This document shows positions 1-22,460 of a stretch of 26,574 nt of DNA, piece by piece. Source of the DNA: Trichoplax adhaerens (lineage: Eukaryota; Animalia; Placozoa); NCBI RefSeq assembly GCF_000150275.1, contig NW_002060975.1:417041-443614 (forward strand), in the 5' to 3' direction. The notes under the pieces were generated by a model. It was not told the DNA's origin, did no database searches, and saw only the letters and a list, made by a program, of their open reading frames with translations. Numbering within the stretch: the stretch's first letter is position 1; the number at the start of each line of letters is the position of its first letter. The position numbers and the translations under genes are program-made.

Positions 1-1
1 T

Positions 2-7
2 TTTATT
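2..7 (-). terminator. Candidate polyadenylation signal of the prepropeptide gene
   Basis: AATAAA on the minus strand about 230 nt after the stop codon. The hexamer is common by chance in AT-rich DNA. Confidence 0.35.
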
Positions 8-235
8 TGATATTGCAATTATACACTACTTCGTCTAGCCATGAACTAGCAGTAATACTTTACGGATCATTCAGTTTTAAACTACTGTTAACAAGATGCG
101 ATAAAATAGCATTTAAATATTCTACATTCTTAGTTTAGCAAAATATAGACAGTATACGATTCTTATCTGTCTTGGTTGCTCTCTAATTTTAGGAAAATGG
201 ACCTTATAAACTAGTTTAATTCTGTAGTGAATATT

Positions 236-364
236 TTATCGTTTTTTGCCATAGACGAAAATCTGTCGACGACGATAAAAATGGAAGATGATGGGACGTC
301 GAGGTTTCGGAGCAGGGGCTGGAGCACGACGACGACGGCGGCGGCGACGGCGCCAAAAGGCCTG
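236..364 (-). CDS. Secreted prepropeptide, coding exon 2 (cationic Arg/Pro-rich C-terminal peptide with G-KKR amidation/cleavage signal)
   Basis: After acceptor ctatag|cag| the phase-0 frame reads (Q)AFWRRRRRRRRRAPAPAPKPRRPIIFHFYRRRQIFVYGKKR* with TAA at 238..236. It is a GC-rich island in AT-rich DNA and is in frame with the upstream donor. Too short and ATG-less to appear in the ORF track. Confidence 0.82.
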   Translation of the reverse strand, partial: QAFWRRRRRRRRRAPAPAPKPRRPIIFHFYRRRQIFVYGKKR

Positions 365-894
365 CTATAGTAAATTTCAAGTTGAAAAGAGTTTTAGTAT
401 TTAGATAGATATATTTAAAAAATTTTTAATTTTATGGAATATTTGCATTAAAAGACTACTCATTTTCACAATTAACAGCGCAAAGTTAACTTGTGAGAAG
501 GAGCTGATTTTAGGATAAGATTGCTTGTAGAAATGTGTTATTAAATGACTTTGAATCCTCAATTATCATTATAGATTATCCTAACTATGAAATGTAAAAT
601 ACTACCAAATTATGCCGTAACTATGATAAGCTTACTGATAATTATAGACAGTAGCTTCTATATGTATTATTATTATAAATTGCAAGGTATCTTATGATGA
701 AATTGCTTTAGTAATGCACGATAAATTTACTTTGAATCATATAGTATCATAGTAGATCATACTACCTATGTAATATAGAATGTCACCGAATAATGCCTTA
801 ATTATGATAGATGTACTGATAATGATAGATAACAGTCTCGTCTGCATGGTAGTATTATTAAAAGCTACGATGTATAATTATCCTAAATACTCAC

Positions 895-1164
895 GGTGCT
901 TTTCTCGGTTAGACCATTCTCAAATTCTGAATCGAATCCTTTATCCATGTCATAAGACTCATCTATTTCTCCAAGTTCGTTGTATGCATCTTTGTCGGCA
1001 ATTTCGTACGGGTCTAGTTTATGGACATCCTTTTCAGCAATATCGTAATAGCCTGGTCCATGCCCACCCTTATTGTCATTATCGAGCTTAGAATTGTCAT
1101 CTTCAGTGGCGTAAGCAAATGTAAAGAGAAATAGACACGCAATGAGAGCCAATTTAGTATTCAT
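895..1164 (-). CDS. Secreted prepropeptide, coding exon 1 (signal peptide + acidic propiece, 90 aa); full CDS join(236..364,895..1164), 132 aa
   Basis: ATG at 1164 (context gaaaATG). MNTKLALIACLFLFTFAYA has the shape of a 19-aa signal peptide ending A-Y-A. It is followed by 71 aa containing 22 D/E and 7 K. The exon ends at a canonical phase-0 donor ACC|GTGAGT (intron 894..365). An upstream acceptor ctatacag| starts the exon at 1182. Confidence 0.88.
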
Positions 1165-1358
1165 TTTCTTGCAATGATCCTTCTGTATAGTCAATGAAAT
1201 AAAGATTAATCTTTAGTACTGGATAGACTGTAGTATTCGAATTGAAATTGAAATGATGAATATACGGCATCTTCGAATATAGTATAGATTGAATGATTAA
1301 TACATATTATTGCGACTATAACCTTGATTTTTAAAAAACGCTTAATGTTAATACGTAC

Positions 1359-1512
1359 CTCAACAACTTTTAATTTTCTAAATTAATTCTTGAGATAAAT
1401 TCTGCGATCCTTCCTGAATTTCCAAAGTAAAGCAATAGACAATATTTTAAGGAAGCTTAGTGTTCGATTTCCAGTGGTTAAGATTTTGAGCTGCAAGATA
1501 GCTGTTTATATA
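1359..1512 (-). promoter_or_regulatory. Putative TATA box and non-coding first exon of the prepropeptide gene
   Basis: Minus strand TATATAAA at 1512..1505 implies a start near 1475-1480. Donor GAG|GTACGT at 1359/1358 can pair with the acceptor ending at 1183, giving a 5'UTR intron 1358..1183. Confidence 0.5.
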
Positions 1513-4500
1513 TCCTAGCTTTAACAAAAGGAACGTCTTACTTTTATAAATGATTGATAAATATTCGAGCGAAATTAAAATAAAGTCATAGTTCTAATCA
1601 ATCTGAGAGTGTTTGCATTGTAATTTCCTCAGTATCGATATCTTTAATTTCGATAATTCAGGAAAATTTCAACTAAAAAACATCGTTTTTATTTGTTCAC
1701 ACGCTTATTATTATCTTCAATTTTATATGCTTTATTGTAAAAATAGTGCATTTTGGATAACGAAAAGGTAATAAAGAGGAAGGTAACAATTCTTTGTGTT
1801 TTAAATCAGGGAAATGAAAGTATTAACGACGGGTTGAAGTTACATAATAAATGGAGTATTAAGATAATATTTTCAATGGGTTGTTACAAATTAGTCTGAT
1901 CTCAATAAAATTTCTCTTAAGATTGTTATTTAAAGTACTAAGATGGAATAATGACAGTTTTACATACATGATGCTGATTGTGAACATTTCTAATAGCATA
2001 CGATTACCAGATGCCTTAGGCAACATGTAGTTCCATATCAATAAACAAAGAAAATTGACGTTGTTTACTTTATAAGAGCCTTGTGGACAGGGTAATTAGA
2101 ATTTGAGTTGAAATTAATATAAACATTACATATATATTACTAACTATACTGTATATAGGAACATATACACTAATCTTTATAATTCAAGTGTTTAACTTGC
2201 TATCTATATTCTGAGATAATAATGGAATAAATTAATCATGGCTACAATTACATTCAGTATATCGTGATGATATCACAAGGAAAAAATAATCCTAATTCAA
2301 AACTTGTTTATTGAAGTTTCATTCATATATTTTTCATTTACTTTAGCCAAATTAATTAGTTATAGGATAGTCATCAATGATACCAAAGTCTGCCGCTATT
2401 GAAATTATTAAAGTCTGTTTAAATTATGACTAATAAGGTAACATGAATACTCAATAAACGATCTATTGAAATCAAATGAACGGCGGAAGGAGTTAGTTTG
2501 CTACATGAAAAATATGACTCTAACCCGGACTTACCTTTAAATTTTCCTTATGTTTATAGAATTCATTTTATCACCAGTGTTGATGCTCTTATCTAGGGTA
2601 ATCGAAATATTATAATTTGGATAGTTGCACTGCGAAAGCTAATCTACCAATTCAGCTAGAATGTACACAGATAATCGGTAAAACTTATTCTTGATTATTT
2701 AAATATTAATTAATACAGTAGCTCGTTTTAATTAGGCTACGACATATAAGTACTTTAGTTCATTTGTTATAGCACAATTTAGTATAAGACAGAATAACTT
2801 CCGGTTCAAACAGNTCAACAAAATATTCTAGCTCATATACTGTAATTAATTAGATTTGTATTCATTCACCATTTTTAACGCCAAGACAGCGATAAGACTA
2901 TATTTATTTGATTTGTTTAACACTAGCGATCTTATAAATGATTATTAAATAGCAGTAACTCTAAAATTATTGTAATTTCTATTCTCAGTAAAATTATGCC
3001 ATTATCATTAAGCTAGATAACAGGAGATTACTTTCGACTCTTCACTTGCTTTCTTACTTTCTCCAATATTAAATGCCGACTCATTCTTAGTGAGTAAAAT
3101 GCTATGACTTCTTTGTCTGGCCGTTAATGCAAATTTTACGTGCCGATTCTCATCATTATCCAAAAAAAAAATTTTTTGTCCAGTACAAATCATAGAATAG
3201 CATTGGTGTAGCAAACTCCTAAAACTAAATTTGGTTTCCACGCATGTTTTATTATAATAATTATCATAGTGCTAAGTAAATGGAAACTCTTTTCCAAATA
3301 GAGCAATAGTTGCAATTTTCTTACGGACGAAATTCACTTTCCAATATCAGATCCTAAGTTAACTTAATAGCTGAATGAACACATTGCAATTTAACAGAGC
3401 TTTAATGGGCTGCATGAGACTCCGTATAATTAGACTTCTCTTGTTTATTCATCCACTAAGGATCCATCAAAATATTGCATTTAGAACTCTACTAAAGCCT
3501 AATCCTTGCAATAGTTATGAATGTTATTATTATAAATCTAAATTTGACGTGATTAGAAGAATTAAACATCGCAAAGAACTAAATATCTAGAGTCTACGTT
3601 CAGGTATGTCCTCCCGACATCTACAGTACGACTCTAAATACGGACAATCTCTTATCATCAGAAGAAATAGTAACACAACTAGTTGCTCTTAGACACAACT
3701 GAACTCCAACTTTATTGAAAAATTCTGTCAATTTATAGTATATTTAGGTAAGTGATCTTAAGGAAACTATGTTGCAGCAAAGTACTGTAACTTTACGGAG
3801 TATCAGTGATGTAAACTGATAGAAAACCATCGCCAATAATTACAAGTACGTGTTACAGTTCAAAGAACTAGCTTATGATTGAGGTTGCAACATATGCTAA
3901 GCAAATTAATTTCTGTAAGTTTACAAAAAGTTTTAGTTCTTAATGTATATTTTGAAGATACTTTATAATAAAGACGGAAGCCGTTTTAGAACCTTGGAAA
4001 TTAGGAATTTCGGATTGAAGAGTATCGCTCTTCTTAGGACTGCTGATAGTTTTGTTCGTATATCTATTGACGCCGTTATTATCGTGCAATATATTTACTA
4101 GTCACCTTTAAACTTTTTCCGGGGAAATTAGCCCAGCTTCTGTACGATAGACAACTTTTATAGTACTGATCATTCCATTGCTTTTACGAATTTTCATTAA
4201 TAGATTAGCTAATCTCGATATCAATTATTAAGTAAAAACTACCTGTAATAGAGAACGATTACATTGTATTTCAAAGATATAATGATTAAAAGCAATAAAC
4301 TACAATCTTATGCAAAGCTTTTTAGCCATTAAACCATTTACAGAATCTTATATCTTAGTCTACAAATTACCATCGTAAACATAAAATATCTACAATTATG
4401 CCTTCCGGGTAAAAAGTAAATATATCTTAACGTCATGTTAAACTATTTTACGTCCTGATTATTTTTTACCGATATAAATTACCATAACTAAGCTTACTGA

Positions 4501-5002: not shown

Positions 5003-5567
5003 ACGGTGTAACAGCCCAGACTAGCCTAGTTTATACCCCGGAGTATAATCTACGCTAGCCTTATTTATATCCCCCTAGGTCAAATTTACCCAATTCTACT
5101 TACAGATATATCTAATAAGCGAGAAAACAACATTATTGATCTGCTTTCACATCAAATAATCAAGTGCAGACCACAACAAACACAATTGCGAGAAATATTT
5201 TATAATCATAGCTTTATTTAGTGAGTTCTGGATAACGCAGCTTGGCAGAGTACGTTAGCATCTACTATGACTAGCGGACCTTAATCTAAGCGATAGAATT
5301 CTTACCAACTGTAGTTTCAGGAAGATTGCTAATAATGTCAATCCTAATTAGCTTCTAGATCTTGGCCGGTAATGGAATAGGATTGTGTGGAAGAATTTCA
5401 TTGCTGACTTTGCATTACTTTTGAAGCATTTGAACACTGAAGCATTTTGAACATGCTTTCACGTATTCTGCTACATCTTTCTGCATGTCCTTCTAGTAAC
5501 ATCGATGGGATATTTTATGAAGGGTTTTATCTCTGCCAAAGTGCTTACTTGCTCCTGGATTACATTC
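5003..5567 (-). mobile_element. Ginger1-like DNA transposon remnant (one terminus plus integrase fragment)
   Basis: ACGG|TGTAACAG at 5003..5014 looks like a TGT terminus with a CCGT/ACGG-type 4-bp target site. It is followed by two subterminal copies of CTAGCCT.(G/T)TTTATA(C/T)CCC (about 5021 and 5055), and lies 300 bp from the integrase fragment. The matching second terminus was not found in the window. Confidence 0.55.
5306..5567 (-). pseudogene. Degenerate Gypsy-like integrase fragment (H2C2 zinc-binding domain + start of the DDE core), Ginger/GIN-type transposase relic
   Basis: One minus frame reads ECNPGASKHFGRDKTLHKISHRCY*KDMQKDVAEYVKACSKCF...*...EILPHNPIPLPAKI*KLIRIDIISNLPETTVG. This matches the integrase pattern CH..GHFGRDKT..KI..RYYW..M..DV..YV..C..C ... 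PIP....W..IGIDIIG.LP.T..G. Stops at 5495, 5417 and 5357; two replace conserved Trp. A ~16-nt internal duplication lies near 5422-5455. Bounded by ttttag| and G|GTAAG. Confidence 0.85.
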
Positions 5568-14270: not shown

Positions 14271-14691
14271 ATGGAGGAACAAGGCAAAGAGAAAATGGAC
14301 GATCGGCTATCTTCCATCGGTGATTCATCAGAAGCAATAACACTATCCGATGAAGAAAAATCGACACCGTCCTTGGATAGTCATACATCTAATGATGCTG
14401 CTTTACGTTTTTCTACAACCATGGCAGAACAAGCGCAAAAATGGGCTAAAATTCAACAGAAAACCTTTACCAATTGGTGTAATGATAACTTAAAAGAGTC
14501 CGGTACCACGGTCCAAGATTTAGCCAAGGATTTAGAAGATGGAATAGTTCTAATTAAATTAGTTGAAACGTTATCCGGTCGTAAAGTTGGTCGATATCAT
14601 CGTAAAGTCAAGAACAAGCCTCAAAAATTGGAAAATGTGGCTAAAGCGTTGAAAGCCATCGCTAACGATACAGTCCAATTAGTCAATATCG
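14271..14691 (+). CDS. Filamin-like actin-binding protein (Jitterbug/FLN-2-like), coding exon 1: N-terminal extension + most of CH1; full CDS 1253 aa
   Basis: accATGg start. WAKIQQKTFTNWCN...DLAKDLEDGIVLIKLVETLSG...QKLENVAKAL...LVNI is a filamin CH1 signature. Phase-1 donor G|GTAAGT at 14691/14692. Confidence 0.93.
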
Positions 14692-15619
14692 GTAAGTAGT
14701 TTTATCTTGTTGCTATCGATGACATCGGATAGAAATTTTCATTTCCTCTGCAAACAGAGACGCCATACTATGATTAAGATAGTTCAATCTCAAACTCTTT
14801 CCTTTTTGACATCATGGAGCTCATGATGGAGGACTTGATTGAAGGTTAAATCGATTGAGGACTCGGCATATTTCAATTTTACCCCTGTTTTATTGACTAG
14901 TCGATTTGAAATTGAATCGATCCATCGTTCCATTTTTTTTTTTTTCCCCCTCTTTTCCACTTAATATCCTATAAAACTGATTTAAATTGGACAATGATTT
15001 ATTTCTTCATACCTTGACTTCAAGATCGAATGGATTAACATCGATGCTTTTAGTTTAATATTTATAAGATTCTCATGCAATAGGCAAAAAATGATTGTAC
15101 CTTTAGCGATAGACTACAAGAGAAAAATGACCTCGATATGAATGTAGGAAGCCATGGACTACCGTGAGCGTAGAGTTTGTAAAAGTTCACTTCTTCAGCT
15201 ATTAATGCTGTCTAGTCGGGCAAATTAACTATTCTGATCCTACTGGTAAATTGCAATCGACTACCATCCTATTTTACAGTAAAAGAGAGCGAGAAAAGGG
15301 TCAGGGTTACTGCTAAACTGGTGCACATTTGATCGTCTCATTCAAGTCATCTCATTCATGATGTTGAAAAAAAAACGAGACTGTAAACTAATTTCTCGAG
15401 CATCATTACTTAATTAATTATCGTTACAACATCATATCCAAAAGTTTAAACTTGAGTTTGCCAACATTAGACGATATATATCTTCGTAGCCATTTTACTT
15501 TACTCAATTCCAACCGATTGCAGGCTTAAAGTGTTCGACGATGAGTGATTAGCACCATTTTGTGTTGAAATCATGGAGGGAGATTACTATTAGTTGGAAA
15601 ATGAACGACAGCTGGATAG

Positions 15620-15965
15620 CGTTGTGCACTGCAGTAGGCACTTGTAAGATTCGAAGAAATTCTCGTCCAAATCTTGGTTCTCGCTATTCCATCCAGGTTG
15701 ATGAAAGCACCCTAGACAGATCCATGCATCAATATTCAATGAAGTACTCTCCTCTTTCGCACAGAAATATTAGGCTAGGACTAATTAGCGCCATTTTATG
15801 TTCAAACCTTCTACTGAGATTGATTACTTTGATGAAGTAGAAGACTAGAGCGTTGTAGCAAAGGCTTGAAAGAGTTGGAAAAATTGTCCTACATGTCCCT
15901 GCTTATAGCTATTGCATCCATGTTCCTGAAAGGATCCTAGACAGATACACTAATCAATATGAAAT
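15620..15965. repeat. Old diverged duplication in filamin intron 1, period about 228 bp
   Basis: gctatt.catcca.gtt..tgaaag.a.cctagacagat.ca...atcaatat at about 15683 and 15908; agcgttgt lies upstream of each. Confidence 0.65.
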
Positions 15966-16721
15966 AGAAATCGAGAAAGATTGCTTTTATCGTTATAGCA
16001 AGGAATAGATGCGTCAAGATGATACCATCTTGCTTTGTACAAGAAGGGATAGCTTAGGATTTCATTTTAAATTAGTAAGAGCTCTAAATTGAATTGGATC
16101 TTTCTCCCAATTTTTATCCATCGTATTCGTTTAAACTGCTACGGTGCCTAAAGATAGTCTTTAGTTATAAGCAGACCATGATGAGTTTAATTATGCCTTG
16201 ACAGCTTGTATGCAAAAATCGATCGATTCCATCAACACAAGATTGATTCAGAATGAGCGATAGTTTAATATCATTGGAGTTGTTGCTTACCCAAATACCG
16301 ACCTATCATAACAGCACTACTCGCTAAAGGATTGAGAATTGGTTTAAGTACCCACGCAAGGCTGTTGATAGACCAACGATGAAAAAGATCGATGGAGGCT
16401 TATGGCATTACTTATCGGATTAACGATTAAGTTTTTAAGTCAAGAATTGATGACCAACGCTGGATTGGCTCAGTAGAAGGAGTGTCTTGAAATGAACGAT
16501 AGAACACCATGAAATACTCACAATATAACGGCAAAAACGATAGATAGAACCCTGATGGCAATTTCTGCCATGGTTTCATGGATTATGGACTCTTTCGATG
16601 GTCTAGATTTTATAGCATTTTCAGTAAACGTTCCATTTGCCTTTTCTTAAACGTTCACCGCCATGACAGCACTGAGAGTAGAGAATATGATGAAATATTG
16701 ACATTATCCTCAAGATCGACT

Positions 16722-17870
16722 TATGATGGAGTTTACATGATAACTGATGATTCGTTTAGAGTCGGCAAGATTGGAACAACATTAAAATTGATTCCTAGTA
16801 AGACGTCTAATAGAACTTCCGTCATTAAAGTAAAGTCGATAATGAAATATGGTATTTGCATTCGATTTTTAAACAGACCCATGATCACTAGATTTGGATA
16901 AAGTTTGACAGGATCATTTTGTCAGATCAATCACTTTATCATTAAGCTAGAGTGGGCAAGATTGGAATAAAATGAAAGACGTCTAATAGGACTACCGTCA
17001 TTAAATTAGAGTCTGTAATGAAATACTGGCATTCGATTTTTATACAGGCCCATGATTAATAGAATTGGATGGAGTTTTACATCATCATTTCGTTAGATCC
17101 ATGACTGTATGATTAGATTACAGTCGGCAAGACGATGGCTAGAATTGGATGGAGTTTTTACATTATCATTTCAGTAGATCCGGGACTGTATGATTACGTT
17201 AGAGTCGGTAAGACGATGGCTAGATTTGGATGGAGTTTTACATCATCATTTTAGCAGATCATTGACTGTATGATTAGGTTAGAGTCGGCAAGACGATGAC
17301 TAGAATTGGATGGAGTTTTACATCATCATTTAAGCAGATCATTAACTGTATGATTAGGTTAGAATCGGCAAGAACTAGACGAAAGTTTTACATTATCATT
17401 TCAGTAGATCATTGACTGTATGATTAAGTTAGAGTCGGCTAGACGATAACACAAATTGGATCGAGTTTTACATCATCATTTCGTTAGATCAATGACTGTA
17501 TGGTTAGATTAGAGTCTGCAAAACGATGACTAAAATTGGATAAAGTTTTACATGATCATTATAGTAGATCAATGACTGTATGATTAGGTTAGAGTCAGCA
17601 GGACGATGACTAGAATTGGATAAAGTTTTACATGATCATTTTAGTAGATCAATCGCAGTTTAATTAACTCAGAGTTGGCAAGATAGGATCAACATTGCAT
17701 TTCTTCCTTGTAAGGCGTCCAGCAGAACCACCTTAATTCAATTAGAGTCAATCATGAAATGCTCGCCTCTTGTATTATAGAAACCGATGATCATTAGAAT
17801 AGATGGAGTTATAGGGGTCCATTTTAGTAGATCAATCGTGATTGGGTGGATAGGAAATTGGCAAGATTTT
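16722..17870. repeat. Nested intronic repeat: 80-bp unit x8 (17060..~17690) inside diverged ~170-190-bp units
   Basis: taga(a/t)ttggat..agtttta-like starts at 17060, 17140, 17221, 17301, ~17371, 17451, 17531 and 17611. Longer units with the extra block gacgtctaatag.act.ccgtcattaaa.ta.agtc..taatgaaata flank the array. Confidence 0.92.
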
Positions 17871-18633
17871 AGTAATACTACGAGTGATTATTCGATATAT
17901 ATTTGAACGAGAATAAGATGGAGGGCCGCGAGCATCAGGTGTTATGGAGATCAACTTGGGATCAAGGCGTAGCAGCAGGACATTTTTTATCCTCGCTTTA
18001 ATTCTCCACTGTGTGATCTATTTAATCAGACTAGGCATTAACTCAACAGATTTAGACCCTAATATTTATTTTTCTCTCCTTGTTTATTTTAGCTCATCAT
18101 TTTTAATCTCTTCTGTAAGCTAATTGTCCACTAATTATAATATTATCAACTAATCAACATCGATATTTAACTTTGAGTAATACATTGGTATAGAGTTGTA
18201 AGTAATTGGGGTTAAAAATCGATCACGGCTTGACGTCCATTCAAATGAATATCAAAAAGAAGGCCAAGTAAATAGTAATAGTAGACGTATTATTCAAATA
18301 GGTTGGATAGAAAGTCGATCAATATCTATCACAGCATGATCTAGAACTAAGTCATCGATATATTGAAATTTAGATAGCACGATTGAACGATGGCAAGGTT
18401 GCAATTTTCTACATGGATAACAGGTGTTTTTACCGAGATGGAGAGTAGGAAATTCATCACTCGTTGACTATCTTCCATATCGATTCTATATCGATCTTCA
18501 AGCATAGATTATTCTTTCTTACAAACTTATCCCAACTACTCGTTTAACAACTTTGCTTTGATCATTACTATTGCTTAATAATAATATAGTAACGTAATTA
18601 ATGTCGATGCATTTTTACTCATTTGTCAAATAG

Positions 18634-19239
18634 GGAACGAAGATATCGTCAATGGCAACTTGAAACTAATTTTAGGCCTGATATGGAGACTAATTTTAAC
18701 CTACCAAATTAAAGTCAAGACCGATTCAAGCGACAAGCATAAAGCATCGGCGAAATCGTTAATGATGACATGGATTCAATCCATCATGCCAGCTTGTCGT
18801 GTCCGAAATTTAAATAAAGATTGGAATACAGGAATTCCACTATGCGCCCTTGTCGATCATATTCAACCAGGTGTCTGTCCTCAATGGACTAGCTTAGATT
18901 CTCGCAATCGATTAAACAATGCTCGATTGGGCATGAATATTGCCGAAGAGAAACTTGGTGTTCCACAAGTTTTATCCCCGGAAGATTTAATTAGCCCTGA
19001 ATTAGATGATCTTAGCATGCTAACCTATCTATCTTATTTTACATCAACACAAGAATCGCCTGGCTATCAAGAAGTATTAAAATTTGTAAATAGTCATCTT
19101 CCAGAAGAATTAAACGTTGGAAACTTTTCAACTGATTGGAAAGATGGCAAAGTCCTACATGAATTTGTCAATGCAATCTATCCCGGAGCTGCTCGACCAC
19201 CTCCACCCGAAGCGGTGCCGGAACAGTTAATTAATTTAG
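18634..19239 (+). CDS. Filamin-like, coding exon 2: end of CH1, CH2, start of a third CH domain
   Basis: Acceptor aaatag| restores VNIG-NEDIVNGNLKLILGLIWRLIL. Contains the motifs NLNKDWNTGIPLCALV and NFSTDWKDGKVL. Phase-1 donor G|GTAAGT at 19239/19240. Confidence 0.93.
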
Positions 19240-19399
19240 GTAAGTTTTTAGCATTCTTTACCGTCAGATATGGTAACCTTTACTATGCCGTAAATAAGGT
19301 ATAAGGAAGCTCTGAAGCGATGCTGTCGAGTTCTATCTAATCATCTTACTAACACTATTTTAAATATTGATCTTAACTGTCCTCACCGTTATCTTTTAG

Positions 19400-19579
19400 C
19401 CCTTACTGGAGCCGAACAGAAACTCGGTATTAAGCCATTATTCGCAGCGAGTAGTTTAATTAAAGCCGATGCTGTCGATGAATTCCCATTATTAACCTAT
19501 TTAACCATGTTTCGTAATTGTAAATCGATGGTTGATTATTTGAGAGAATGTACTGTTCAAGGTCCTGGAATAGTCAAAG
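19400..19579 (+). CDS. Filamin-like, coding exon 3 (180 nt, not in ORF track): end of CH3 and start of Ig repeat 1
   Basis: cttttag| ... G|GTAAGC, phase 1-1. Translates ALTGAEQKLGIKPLFAASSLIKADAVDEFPLLTYLTMFRNCKSMVDYLRECTVQGPGIVK. Confidence 0.88.
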
Positions 19580-19614
19580 GTAAGCACACTTGTTGTTTTT
19601 CTTCATGAAGGAAT

Positions 19615-19770
19615 TTGTACAGTTTAGATAGCAATTCTTGAAATGATATAAATTATCCATTTCAGCCACTAGTTATTTCGTTCGATTTTGTACAGTCTTG
19701 ATAGTAATTCTTGAAATTGCACAAATTAGAGTTATTAATTCTATTTAAACAGTTAGTTATTTCGTTAGAT
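19615..19770. repeat. Short diverged duplication in filamin intron 3
   Basis: ttgtacagt...gatag.aattcttgaaat..a.aaatta and tagttatttcgtt each occur twice. Confidence 0.7.
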
Positions 19771-19905
19771 AGGATGTGATTAAGGTTAAACTTATTCAGC
19801 AATATTCTAAAGGTGTAGTATAAATTGAACCAATAAAAGTTCAGAACTACCTAGCATACTAATTGCAACATACTACTCTTCTCTTAATTTCTATTGTAAA
19901 TGCAG

Positions 19906-22460
19906 GCTCAAAGAACAATTTTGCTGAATTCATAGTTAATTTAACCAGTGATTTAGATAGTAGAAATCTAGTCATCAATGCCTATTGCAAAAAAATACAA
20001 GCTCCTGTCAACTTGAATGACAATCGCAAGGGTAAAGTTTTCGCATCTTTCTTTCCAACCATTGCTGGCGATTGGACTATCGAAGTCCGCTATCGGGATA
20101 AACATTTGCCAGGCAGTCCATTTAACATCGTCGTGAGAGGAGAAAGTAAATCAGTTACAGCAGCAGGAGATGGACTTTCGCAAGCATGTGTTGGACGATC
20201 TGCTTGCTTTCTTGTCCATACGGTTGGTCATGGAGAATTAGCAGTAAAAGTACATGATCCTGATAGAAAATCGGTCGATTATATCGTATCACAGCGCGAT
20301 GGAGAACATCAAATTCAATATACCCCATCCAAGATTGGATTATATACCATTGCAGTGGAATGGGATCGTGCAGCCATTACTGGTAGCCCTTTTACAGCCA
20401 ATGTTTGTAATTTAGACAAGATTATGGTAGAAGGTGATGGAATTTATCAAGGGCACATCAATCTTCCATGTAAATTTACCATTAAGGTCCCTGAAGAGGT
20501 AGGCGATGGCGATCTTGTAGTCAGTGTCTATTCCGAGGCAGATCAACAATCTATTCCGGTCAGAATCGATCAAGAATTAATGAGCTATTACGTCACTTTT
20601 GTTCCAACAACCACATCCAATTATAATATTAACATTTCTTATGGTGGCTTTCCCATTTCTAAAGTACCGTATACATGTCGAATTGATCAACCTATTGATT
20701 CCAAGAAATGCTACTTTGATCTATTGCCTTCCAAGCGAGTTCTTACCGATCATGATATATGCTTAAGCGTCGATACAAGCCAATCTGGCCGAGCTACCTT
20801 AACTGCCTCTCTATTGGATTTAGAGGATGATAAAACAATCTTACCAGCTGATATAAGCAATGACAATTCAGACGGAAAGTATATCGTTAAATTTAATGGT
20901 AAATCGTTAAAACCCAGCCGATATCGAACAACAGTGCAGTGGGATCAATCGGATATACAAGGTTCACCATTTGAATTTACTGCTTTAAATTTCAAATCAT
21001 TACGTGTAGAATGCAAAAATAATTTAGATACTCCTCACCTGGCTAATGATGTTATTAATATCGTCTTATACGCTGATGAAGATTTTACTGCTACAGATTT
21101 TACCGCTGTAGCTAAATTATCACAATTAAGTACACCATTAACCATTGTGGGCAATGAAGAAGCTAAAAATGAATATCGAATTCAGTTTTGTCCGTCTAAA
21201 AGTGATGATTACCTGATTGAATTTCGTAGTCATGGGATAGAAATACCTGGTAGCCCTTTGATGTTTAAAGTCGTCGATCCAAGTAAAATTGTCCTAGATG
21301 AAATGATCGGTAAAGTAATTAACTGTAAAACAATTATTCCAATTCGTACGCAAGAAGCTGGTTCAGGTAAACTAGAAGTAATCATTCTAGATTCTTATCA
21401 TAATCCATGCGATTACAACTTAGACGAAGTTGGCCCTGTATGGATGGCAGTATTCTATCCTAAACATGTTGGCACCCATTATCTTAGTGTCAAGTATGCT
21501 GGCTATAATATCGTGGATAAAAAACCATTTGCTGTCGATTATCCAACAGATGCTAGCCAATGCAAAGCTAATGGCTCAGGCCTATCTTATGCTCTTGCTA
21601 ATCAAGAAAATTTCATTTCTGTCGATACTAGTCAAGCTGGCCAAGGTGAATTAAGGATCGATATGCATGGAGTGCATGAACAGCCTAAGCTCACTTTGAA
21701 AGAAGAAGGAGATCGAAATTTTATACTATCTTATCGCGCAAGTAAACCTGGCGCTTATTTATTAAATATTCGATGGGCTGATGATCATATACCTGGTAGT
21801 CCATTTAAAATTAATGTTGAACAAGGTGGTGCTAATAAAATCCAGACTTATGGCCAAGGTTTACGCGAAGGTAATTTAGGTGATCCTGTCCAATTTACAG
21901 TCAACACGATCGAAGCTGGTCCTGGTAAATTAAAAGTCCAGGTAGTTGGGCCACAGACCGATGCTGATTATGAGATTGTCGATCAAAAGGATGGTAGCTA
22001 TCTCATTCAATATTTTCCCAACGAAACTGGTAAACATAAAGTATTTGTTTCCTATAACGATCAGCCCATTCAAGGTAGTCCATTTACATCTCGTATTACG
22101 CGTCCACCCAATGCGGGTAAAGTAAGTGCAGAAGGACCTGGACTTTGTAGCGATATTCTGGATGGATTCAATGGCAATTTTGTTGTCGATACACGCACTG
22201 CTGGAGAAGGAATATTAAGAGTGCGCATTTATGGACCTAAAGGAGGCTTTGCAGTTTATATGTCACGTAATCCTGAAATGGAGCGTTTAATCGATGTCCG
22301 ATATAATCCTACGGAAATTGGCCATTATAAAATTGATATAAAATGGTCGGATGTTCATATCCCTGGTAGTCCATTCGATATTTGGATAGTAAGCTCACCA
22401 GAAGAATTGAAGAAAATTCAAATGTACGAAAACACTGAAGGTTGGGTTAAATATGTTTAA
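19906..22460 (+). CDS. Filamin-like, coding exon 4: about 9 filamin/ABP280 Ig-like repeats
   Basis: Acceptor tgcag| ends at 19905, in frame with the 865-aa ORF. Repeated G.GL...F.V.T..AG.G.L...Y.P...G.Y.I.V.W....I.GSPF motifs. Exon lengths 421+606+180+2555=3762 nt = 1253 aa + stop. Confidence 0.95.

What the first reader, a model, noticed from the sequence alone, without database searches (positions are those of the whole stretch)
236..1164. Hidden spliced precursor of a nona-arginine, Pro-rich, C-amidated cationic peptide (candidate new host-defence or cell-penetrating peptide family)
Seen: splicing ACC|GTGAGT (894) to TAG/CAG (365/362) turns the unremarkable 103-aa ORF into a 132-aa protein. 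It comprises a 19-aa signal peptide, a 71-aa acidic spacer, and QAFWRRRRRRRRRAPAPAPKPRRPIIFHFYRRRQIFVY-GKKR. Established: the layout signal + anionic propiece + cationic C-terminal peptide ending in Gly is that of Hydra arminins and many AMP precursors. Gly followed by basic residues is the carboxypeptidase/PAM amidation signal. R9 is a classic cell-penetrating motif, and Pro/Arg-rich AMPs such as Bac7 and PR-39 act inside cells. Inference: the gene encodes a stored, processed secretory effector combining an R9 uptake module, a PAPAP linker and an aromatic amphipathic tail. I do not recognise the mature sequence as any named peptide.
Basis: partly seen in the sequence, partly recalled or inferred. 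Interest (0 to 1): 0.85.

Follow-up and report, generated by a model that had tools for sequence, protein, structure and literature searches.

The report
Known Trichoplax arginine-rich peptide gene AMP4
The spliced gene is real and highly expressed, but it is the already annotated Trichoplax adhaerens gene TRIADDRAFT_64402, which a 2025 paper named AMP4 and proposed as an arminin-like antimicrobial peptide precursor, so the finding is correct but not new.

Summary
On the minus strand, ATG 1164 to ACC 895 joins across a GT..AG intron (894-365) to 364-239, with a stop at 238-236, giving 90 + 42 = 132 aa. RNA contigs from two studies carry exactly this junction, at 7- to 28-fold the depth of the intron contig. 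A second intron (1358-1183) lies in the 5' UTR.

The gene is not hidden. Both exons are 100% identical to TRIADDRAFT_64402 (XP_002118077.1, 132 aa), which sits on the same 450,750-base scaffold. Mayorova et al. (PLoS One 2025) call it AMP4. They describe it as an arminin-like secretory peptide with an amidation signal, and FISH places it in ventral gland cells 15-30 um from the rim.

- The gene has about 7 near-identical copies (98-99.6%).
- It belongs to a placozoan family of at least 25 loci. Members share a conserved signal peptide, an acidic propiece, a phase-0 intron and a tail that begins with Trp and an oligo-Arg run.
- That family includes AMP3 and the trichoplaxin-2 precursor. A synthetic C-terminal fragment of trichoplaxin-2 is antibacterial.
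- No homology to Hydra arminins was detected.

The scan had already found this family on other DNA of this genome. Function and processing of AMP4 itself remain untested. Novelty: already known. Interest: low.

The parts
1359..1465 (-). Exon 1, non-coding 5' UTR. The 3' end at 1359 is exact. The 5' end is approximate, near 1460, with low-depth contigs reaching 1600.
   Evidence: the joint 1182->1359 (skips 176, GT..AG on the minus strand) is seen in X8 and in 6 contigs of X14. X14 depth falls about 50-fold between bins 1405-1458 and 1459-1512.
1183..1358 (-). Intron 1, inside the 5' UTR (GTACGT...ACAG).
895..1182 (-). Exon 2: 18 nt of 5' UTR plus coding codons 1-90 (ATG at 1164).
   Evidence: It is 100% identical to residues 1-90 of TRIADDRAFT_64402.
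1108..1164 (-). Signal peptide, codons 1-19, with a hydrophobic core and Ala-x-Ala before the predicted cut.
   Evidence: hydropathy and the -3/-1 rule; SignalP was not available. M1, N2, K4, I8, A9 and L11 are invariant across six paralogs.
895..1107 (-). Anionic propiece, codons 20-90. It has 13 Asp, 9 Glu and 7 Lys, net charge -15, and no Cys.
365..894 (-). Intron 2, phase 0 (GTGAGT...TATAG), 26% GC. It contains the in-frame stop at 885-883 that ends the unspliced ORF.
251..364 (-). Predicted cationic peptide, codons 91-128. It has 14 Arg, 1 Lys, 5 Pro and 8 aromatic/His residues, with net charge +15.
326..352 (-). Run of nine Arg codons (CGY). Its length varies among copies: R8 after an R>G change in the C1378 copy, R8 in the C1411 copy, R10 in Trichoplax sp. 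H2.
239..250 (-). Gly-Lys-Lys-Arg at the very C-terminus. This is an amidation signal that needs only carboxypeptidase trimming plus PHM/PAL.
   Evidence: The genome holds PHM-type copper monooxygenase domains. A C-terminal Gly plus basic residues recurs in paralogs.
236..238 (-). Stop codon TAA.
55..235 (-). 3' UTR. The end is approximate.
   Evidence: X14 depth drops from about 21,000 (bin 55-108) to 375 (bin 1-54).

Best explanation
Window 55-1465 (minus strand) is one copy of the Trichoplax adhaerens gene TRIADDRAFT_64402, published as AMP4. It is a three-exon gene whose 132-aa product is a prepropeptide.

Shown here:
- The protein has a family-conserved signal peptide, a Cys-free propiece of charge -15, and a C-terminal exon encoding a +15 Trp/Arg9/Pro/aromatic tail that ends in Gly-Lys-Lys-Arg.
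- The phase-0 intron falls exactly between propiece and tail, as in its paralogs.

Taken from the paper: the mRNA is confined to a narrow ring of ciliated gland cells in the ventral epithelium, 15-30 um from the rim.

Inferred mechanism: the precursor enters the secretory pathway and the acidic propiece neutralises the tail during storage. Carboxypeptidase and PHM/PAL convert the ...Tyr-Gly-Lys-Lys-Arg end to Tyr-amide. The released cationic peptide is secreted onto the feeding surface. There it binds anionic microbial or algal envelopes and acts as a membrane-active or cell-entering host-defence peptide.

The identity and gene model are near certain (about 0.98). The confidence given below is for the defence-peptide function.
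For: - Identity: both exons are 100% identical to P0005 = TRIADDRAFT_64402. That gene's contig length of 450,750 equals the length of the window's scaffold C1382.
- Splicing and expression.
- Published description and FISH: PMC12013895 and PMC11452194.
- Charge-matched propiece and tail.
- Family: a profile of six first coding exons finds 35 places in this genome. Among 1.84 billion representative proteins it finds only 16, and all the named ones are placozoan. These include AMP3 = TRIADDRAFT_60631, whose tail starts Trp-Trp-Arg9.
- Paralog gene models share the phase-0 junction and a Trp + oligo-Arg start.
- Experimental support by paralogy: the gene at C1378, about 35.7-36.2 kb (L034), has a last exon that is Trp-Trp, 13 Arg, and then the published trichoplaxin-2 20-mer. 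That synthetic 20-mer amide has MICs of 0.25-2 uM (PMC7436000).
- Basic triplets alternate with 3-4 hydrophobic residues in the L026 paralog. This argues that basic runs are part of the product rather than cleavage sites.
- Amidating-enzyme and convertase domains are present in the genome.
Against: - No activity test, peptidomic detection or granule localisation exists for AMP4 itself.
- No fragment of the precursor was found in the stored part of the mass-spectrometry table of Najle et al. 2023. That file was cut when stored, so this is weak evidence.
- There is no recognisable cleavage site at the propiece/tail junction (..Glu-Lys-Ser-Thr|Gln..).
- The Arg9, Arg-Arg and Arg-Arg-Arg runs are themselves good convertase sites.
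- The cells expressing it were classed as 'peptidergic' or 'epithelial unknown' in single-cell atlases.
- The AlphaFold model is uninformative, with mean pLDDT 60 and pTM 0.19.
- The tested trichoplaxin-2 fragment excludes the poly-Arg part and differs in sequence from the AMP4 tail.
Confidence: 0.6

Rival explanations
1. AMP4 is a signalling-peptide precursor. Convertases cut after the Arg9, Arg-Arg and Arg-Arg-Arg runs and the basic residues are trimmed. The last piece then becomes a five-residue pyroGlu...Tyr-amide peptide (from Gln-Ile-Phe-Val-Tyr-Gly-Lys-Lys-Arg) that acts on receptors of neighbouring cells. The Arg-rich stretch is only a spacer.
For: - The grammar 'basic site, Gln, four residues, Gly, basic site' is the same as in the placozoan FFNPamide precursor.
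- The expressing metacells were classed as 'peptidergic' by others.
- Convertase P-domains and PHM domains exist in the genome.
- In the C1378 copy and in Trichoplax sp. H2, an extra Gly precedes the Arg run. This creates a second potential amidation site.
Against: - There is only one copy of the motif, whereas known placozoan neuropeptide precursors carry many.
- The motif is absent from paralog tails, while the Trp + oligo-Arg start and the overall cationic/aromatic make-up are conserved.
- The same rule would chop the L026 paralog into tri- and tetrapeptides.
- The propiece charge exactly balances the whole tail.
- No such peptide appears in the literature strings searched or in the stored MS table.
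Confidence: 0.15
2. The cationic tail is secreted intact, but its job is not to kill bacteria. It may serve external digestion or prey capture by permeabilising or agglutinating algae. Alternatively it may condense with polyanions (its own propiece, mucus) as a granule-packing or adhesive material at the rim.
For: - Expression is in a ring of ventral gland cells next to the feeding epithelium.
- Transcript abundance is extreme.
- The charges of -15 and +15 match exactly and the tail is rich in Arg and aromatic residues, which favours complex coacervation (inference).
- Synthetic Trp/oligo-Arg peptides are both antimicrobial and cell-penetrating (e.g. PMC4053608).
Against: - There is no direct evidence.
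- A paralog fragment is a potent antibacterial in vitro.
- Co-expression with an intelectin points to defence.
Confidence: 0.2
3. The locus is a non-functional duplicate or an assembly artefact, and the protein is not made from this copy.
For: - There are seven near-identical copies, several on tiny scaffolds.
- One copy has a premature TAG (C1378) and one has a 678-base deletion (C1411).
- About 70% of X14 transcript depth carries the base found in the other copies at position 1122, not the base of this copy.
Against: - This copy has an intact ORF and intact splice sites.
- About 30% of X14 depth and all of X8 carry this copy's base at 1122.
- X8 and X5 contigs match the window with 2-6 differences per 1-1.6 kb.
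Confidence: 0.03

Closest known systems
TRIADDRAFT_64402 / 'AMP4' of Trichoplax adhaerens (Srivastava et al. 2008 annotation; Mayorova et al., PLoS One 2025, PMC12013895)
   Same: It is the same gene. The 132-aa protein is identical over both exons and sits on the same 450,750-base scaffold. The paper already states the arminin-like layout and the C-terminal amidation signal, and it gives the cell type.
   Different: Nothing differs in sequence. The paper does not report the copy number, the homology with AMP3 and trichoplaxin-2, the conserved intron position, or processing alternatives.
Placozoan Trp/poly-Arg secreted peptide family: AMP3 (TRIADDRAFT_60631), TRIADDRAFT_64292, TRIADDRAFT_56105 and the trichoplaxin-2 precursor (EST GR418172, Juretic et al. 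2020, PMC7436000)
   Same: All share a homologous signal peptide and acidic first coding exon, a phase-0 intron, a tail that begins with Trp(-Trp) and 5-13 Arg, and usually a C-terminal Gly plus basic residues.
   Different: Downstream of the Arg run the tails are unrelated in sequence. AMP4 alone has the Ala-Pro repeat and the two Ile/Phe/Tyr blocks. Per the paper, AMP4 is expressed in a different cell population from AMP1-3 and has no ortholog in Hoilungia or Cladtertia.
Hydra arminins (Augustin et al. 2009)
   Same: The layout is shared: signal peptide, anionic N-terminal propiece, cationic C-terminal peptide ending in Gly, very high expression in a digestive or absorptive epithelium, and taxon-restricted multigene families.
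   Different: No sequence homology was detected. The profile search returned only placozoan proteins and there was no Pfam match. Arminins lack a Trp + oligo-Arg head (from general knowledge, not tested here). The resemblance is best read as convergent precursor design.
Pro/Arg-rich mammalian cathelicidin peptides (Bac7, PR-39)
   Same: Both are cationic, contain Arg and Pro, have an anionic pro-region, and may act inside cells.
   Different: There is no cathelin domain and the propiece is Cys-free. Pro is only 5 of 38 residues, and there are no repeated Pro-Arg-Pro units.
Synthetic oligo-arginine and Trp/Arg peptides (R9 cell-penetrating peptide; Trp-Trp-Arg5-type tags, CWR11)
   Same: A Trp next to a run of Arg is the motif that engineers use for membrane binding, cell entry and antibacterial coatings (papers listed).
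   Different: Those peptides are designed. Here the motif is natural, genetically encoded, charge-masked by a propiece and conserved across a gene family.

Membership tests
TRIADDRAFT_64402 (AMP4) itself | Identical protein sequence and the same scaffold | tested here: met
   Identity is 90/90 and 42/42 to P0005. P0005 is named TRIADDRAFT_64402 on a contig of 450,750 bases, and C1382 is 450,750 bases long.
TRIADDRAFT_64402 (AMP4) itself | Expression in ventral rim gland cells together with Ta 63786 and an intelectin | not testable with these tools
   This is taken from PMC12013895. Only bulk RNA contigs were available here.
Placozoan Trp/poly-Arg secreted peptide family (AMP3, trichoplaxin-2 precursor and others) | Conserved signal peptide (Met-Asn-x-Lys-...-Ile-Ala-x-Leu) followed by an acidic propiece on one exon | tested here: met
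   Alignment A1 has six invariant columns. The profile hits AMP3, 64292, 56105 and 61933 with E from 1e-12 to 4e-18. Pairwise BLASTP E-values are 1e-7 and 5e-9.
Placozoan Trp/poly-Arg secreted peptide family (AMP3, trichoplaxin-2 precursor and others) | Phase-0 intron exactly between the propiece and the cationic tail | tested here: met
   The window has it. L019, L026 and L030 have GT..AG models with phase 0.
Placozoan Trp/poly-Arg secreted peptide family (AMP3, trichoplaxin-2 precursor and others) | Tail starts with Trp and a run of at least 5 Arg, and ends with Gly plus Lys/Arg | tested here: met
   The window has Trp + Arg9 and ends Gly-Lys-Lys-Arg. The same pattern occurs in AMP3, L026, L030 and L034. 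TRIADDRAFT_56105 lacks the terminal Gly.
Hydra arminins | Signal peptide + anionic propiece + cationic C-terminal peptide with terminal Gly | tested here: met
Hydra arminins | Detectable sequence homology to Hydra arminin precursors | tested here: not met
   The HMM of the signal/propiece exon against 1.84 billion representatives gave 16 hits at E <= 1e-3, and none was named as cnidarian. No Pfam family scored above cut-off. Caveats: arminin sequences were not compared directly, because none was returned by a tool, and seven of the 16 hits have no source name on record (four unnamed metagenome or run contigs, three not looked up).
Hydra arminins | Processed C-terminal peptide shown to be bactericidal | not testable with these tools
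   There is no assay for AMP4. Only a paralog fragment, trichoplaxin-2, has been tested.
Cathelicidin-type Pro/Arg-rich peptides (Bac7, PR-39) | Cathelin-like pro-domain with four Cys | tested here: not met
   There is no Pfam hit and the propiece has no Cys.
Cathelicidin-type Pro/Arg-rich peptides (Bac7, PR-39) | High Pro content with repeated Pro-Arg-Pro units | tested here: not met
   Pro is 5 of 38 residues, in one Ala-Pro stretch.
Placozoan/cnidarian amidated neuropeptide precursors | Several copies of a short peptide, each flanked by basic or acidic processing sites | tested here: not met
   Only one candidate unit (Gln...Tyr-Gly-Lys-Lys-Arg) is present. Known precursors carry 3 to more than 40 units.
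Placozoan/cnidarian amidated neuropeptide precursors | Gly + basic amidation signal, and Gln after a basic site for pyroGlu | tested here: met
   (basic runs at residues 95-103, 112-113, 121-123 and 130-132).
Placozoan/cnidarian amidated neuropeptide precursors | The short peptide is conserved among paralogs or orthologs | tested here: not met
   It is invariant only among the 98-99% identical copies and in H2. It is absent from all divergent paralogs.

The most novel reading that the evidence does not exclude
In the rim gland cells the precursor may not be used as one long antibiotic. Instead it may be cut at its arginine runs, yielding a short pyroGlu...Tyr-amide signalling peptide (and, in the Gly-containing alleles, a second amidated end). 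A gene family born as defence peptides would then have been co-opted for cell-to-cell signalling in an animal without neurons. Alternatively, the intact Trp/Arg9 peptide could be a natural cell-penetrating feeding effector against algal prey.
Probability: 0.15. Interest if true: 0.5.

Novelty: already known. Interest (0 to 1): 0.2.

Why it matters
As a discovery it adds little. The gene has been annotated since 2008, is named AMP4, was localised by FISH in 2025, and other windows of this scan had already met its family.

It still has some value as a target:
- It is one of the most abundant transcripts of a specific placozoan gland cell.
- It is a natural, genetically encoded Trp + nona-arginine peptide with a charge-matched propiece.
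- Neither its processing nor its activity has been measured.

The family-level facts gathered here give a firmer basis for choosing peptides to synthesise. These facts are the shared signal exon, the conserved intron phase, the conserved Trp/oligo-Arg head, and an antibacterial fragment from a paralog. They also give a basis for re-annotating mis-modelled members such as 64292, 56105 and 62241.

Tried and rejected
The placement of TRIADDRAFT_64402 therefore rests on sequence identity plus equal contig length.
- The joined 132-aa model was not typed or built. The exons were searched by reference, and the identical database protein P0005 was used by id.
- Pfam gave nothing above cut-off, only composition-driven hits at E 0.01-0.3.
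- The ESM Atlas gave no usable look-alike.
- AlphaFold2 on the single sequence gave mean pLDDT 60 and pTM 0.19, with only the signal helix and a weak helix over residues 87-101. This is uninformative and consistent with disorder. No fold search was run on it.
- Literature string searches for pieces of the tail found no paper.
- The YYamide peptide of Varoqueaux et al. is unrelated.
- The stored parts of the Najle 2023 supplementary tables hold no fragment or gene id of this precursor. The files were cut when stored, so this is not evidence of absence.
- A search for further family members in the window and in the 10 kb to its left found none.
- The alternative CAG acceptor at 362 has no contig support.
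- A direct comparison with Hydra arminin sequences was left out, because no tool returned one and typing from memory is unreliable.

Full report
**What is in the sequence.**
- An ATG at 1164 opens 90 codons that end ...AGC ACC at 895, followed by GTGAGT.
- The intron ends ...TATAG at 365.
- The next exon reads 42 codons (364-239) and a TAA (238-236).
- The intron is phase 0, so the joined product is 132 aa.
- The unspliced reading stops at 885-883.
- The first 19 residues form a hydrophobic core with Ala at -3 and -1.
- Residues 20-90 carry 13 Asp, 9 Glu and 7 Lys (net -15, pI 4.1, no Cys).
- Residues 91-128 carry 14 Arg and 1 Lys (net +15), 5 Pro and 8 aromatic/His residues. They are followed by Gly-Lys-Lys-Arg.
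- The second coding exon is 56% GC, against 26% for the intron.

**Is it spliced and expressed?** Yes. Of 22 public runs listed, 20 hold the stretch. I laid four of them on window 1-1600.
- The joint 364->895 (530 bases skipped, GT..AG on the minus strand) is in X13 at depth 148.5, against 21.5 for the intron-containing contig. X13 is a declared RNA-Seq library.
- The same joint is in X14 at 5136 against 181.
- A second intron (1358-1183) lies in the 5' UTR, shown by the joint 1182->1359 in X8 and X14. The gene therefore has three exons, spanning roughly 1465 to 55.
- X14 depth over the coding exon reaches several hundred thousand, so this is a very abundant transcript.
- One X8 contig has intron 1 removed but intron 2 retained. 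A minor unspliced-at-intron-2 RNA therefore exists. It would encode only the signal and propiece.
- Only the TAG acceptor is used.

**What organism and what gene.** The window is G000:C1382:417041-443614 in a genome of 105.6 Mb and 1414 contigs with about 30% GC.
- The first coding exon finds one 90%-identity cluster in 5.8 billion proteins.
- Its members are TrispH2_007441 of Trichoplax sp. H2, and TRIADDRAFT_64402, 64427, 62560 and 62241 of Trichoplax adhaerens.
- TRIADDRAFT_64402 (XP_002118077.1, 'expressed protein', 132 aa) is 90/90 and 42/42 identical to the two exons.
- It lies on a contig of 450,750 bases, which is the length of C1382.
- The 'hidden' spliced precursor is therefore the standard 2008 gene model.

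**What is published.** Mayorova et al. [quoted passage not shown]
- Their FISH places it in ciliated cells of the ventral epithelium, about 15-30 um from the rim, in the position of Type 1 gland cells.
- It is co-expressed with the secreted protein Ta 63786.
- The metacells also express an intelectin, and had been classed as 'peptidergic' or 'epithelial unknown'.
- A nearly identical gene exists in H2. No ortholog was found in Hoilungia H13 or Cladtertia H23.
- No activity or processing data are given.

**Copies.** The own-genome search finds the gene on seven further scaffolds at 98-99.6% identity, in exons and introns alike.

| Scaffold | State of the copy |
|---|---|
| C1150 | Intact |
| C1375 | Intact, with Ile>Leu in the signal and Ile>Thr in the tail |
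| C1291 | Cut by the contig end |
| C1272 | Similarity ends inside the signal |
| C1238 | Interrupted by an assembly gap of Ns |
| C1378 | Premature TAG at codon 26, plus Phe>Leu and Arg>Gly changes that give Leu-Trp-Gly + Arg8 |
| C1411 | 678-base deletion joining codon 20 to the intron, plus one Arg codon fewer |

- H2 has the Gly form with Arg10.
- Part of this redundancy may be haplotigs, but seven exceeds two alleles.
- At position 1122 about 70% of X14 depth carries the base of the other copies, which gives Ala15 instead of Thr15. Several copies are therefore expressed.

**Family.** Ten kb from the C1411 copy lies a divergent paralog, TRIADDRAFT_56105. Its signal and propiece are 46% identical over 46 residues, and its last exon begins Phe-Trp-Trp-Arg7.
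- Searching with that paralog, and then with a six-sequence profile (A1), finds 35 places in the genome at E <= 0.01, mostly in tandem clusters.
- Where I modelled the paralogs, the phase-0 intron sits at the same propiece/tail boundary, and the tail begins Trp(-Trp/Ser) plus 5-13 Arg.
- Against 1.84 billion representatives the profile gives only 16 hits. The named ones are all placozoan.
- One is TRIADDRAFT_60631, the paper's AMP3, whose tail starts Trp-Trp-Arg9.
At C1378, about 35.7-36.2 kb, a family member ends in Trp-Trp, 13 Arg, and then the exact 20 residues published as trichoplaxin-2.
- The synthetic amide of that 20-mer has MICs of 0.25-2 uM. Its precursor is described as signal + acidic propeptide + 13 Arg (PMC7436000).
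- AMP4 is thus a member of a placozoan-restricted family with at least 25 loci. Other windows of this scan had already met this family.

**Mechanism.** Several points are shown.
- The product is secreted: it has a signal peptide that is conserved family-wide.
- The propiece and tail are charge-matched.
- The amidation signal sits at the extreme C-terminus, so it needs no endoprotease.
- PHM-type monooxygenase and convertase P-domains are encoded in the genome.

Inferred: storage as a neutral pro-form, release of the cationic amidated peptide onto the ventral surface, and membrane-active or cell-entering action on microbes.

The main uncertainty is processing.
- The junction has no dibasic site.
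- The Arg9, Arg-Arg and Arg-Arg-Arg runs could themselves be cut. That would leave a pyroGlu pentapeptide amide, built like known placozoan neuropeptides.
- I rate this lower for four reasons. The motif is single. It is not conserved in paralogs, while the Trp/oligo-Arg head is. The same rule would shred paralogs such as L026, whose tail alternates Arg triplets with 3-4 hydrophobic residues. And the propiece charge balances the whole tail.
- A non-antibiotic role (prey lysis, adhesion, granule condensation) cannot be excluded.

**Comparison with known kinds.** It works like an arminin-type or defensin-type precursor with an anionic propiece masking a cationic peptide. It is not a detectable homolog of Hydra arminins and it lacks a cathelin domain. 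Its Trp + oligo-Arg head matches designs used in synthetic antimicrobial and cell-penetrating peptides.

**Verdict.**
- Observation: confirmed.
- Interpretation: right in outline but already published.
- Novelty: already known.
- Interest: low (0.2).
- Residual value lies in the untested biochemistry.

Noticed in passing
window 14271-22460 (+): Large exons encode two calponin-homology domains and at least seven filamin/ABP280 repeats. This is an ordinary filamin-like gene and the nearest identifiable neighbour of AMP4.
   Followed up: partly
window 253-1415 (run X8, record 14): An RNA contig has the 5' UTR intron removed but intron 2 retained. It would end at the stop at 885-883 and encode only the signal peptide plus acidic propiece.
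   Followed up: no
L030 = G000:C1399:1379058-1382255 (gene at locus 1501-2006): The annotated model of TRIADDRAFT_64292 (P0006, 121 aa) reads on in a wrong frame after the propiece. A GT..AG model with a phase-0 intron gives a 105-aa precursor instead, with a tail of Trp-Trp + 13 Arg ending in Gly-Lys. It is the tandem neighbour of AMP3 (TRIADDRAFT_60631).
   Followed up: partly
L010/L019 = G000:C1411:8140861-8144091: The annotated model of TRIADDRAFT_56105 (P0007, 213 aa) carries about 100 extra N-terminal residues. The family signal peptide starts at its Met103, right after a probable 5' UTR acceptor, so the real product is probably 111 aa. Its tail has no terminal Gly.
   Followed up: partly
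G000:C1378:45254-46693 (L004/L017): This copy of AMP4 has AAG>TAG at codon 26. The public model TRIADDRAFT_62241 (160 aa) avoids the stop with an unrelated N-terminus that lacks a signal peptide. The stop-causing base at 1089 is not seen at 10% or more in the RNA runs laid.
   Followed up: partly
G000:C1411:8152547-8153031 (L008/L018): This copy has a 678-base deletion that removes most of the propiece exon and most of intron 2. There is no N run at the junction. It is either a decayed copy or a mis-assembly.
   Followed up: no
G000:C1411:2806091-2910315: About nine to ten tandem genes carry the Cu2_monooxygen (PHM/DBH-type) domain within 105 kb. This is an unusually large cluster of candidate peptide-amidating enzymes.
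   Followed up: no
window 3515-3760: A dispersed repeat of about 150-230 bases matches at more than 25 places on many scaffolds at 70-82% identity.
   Followed up: no
L020 and L029 = G000:C1411:7399396-7411226: Two tandem family members appear to carry several mini-exons. Each encodes Lys-(Ser/Trp)-Trp, 4-6 Arg, Tyr/Phe residues and Gly-Lys, so they look like multi-unit versions of the family. No gene model was built.
   Followed up: no
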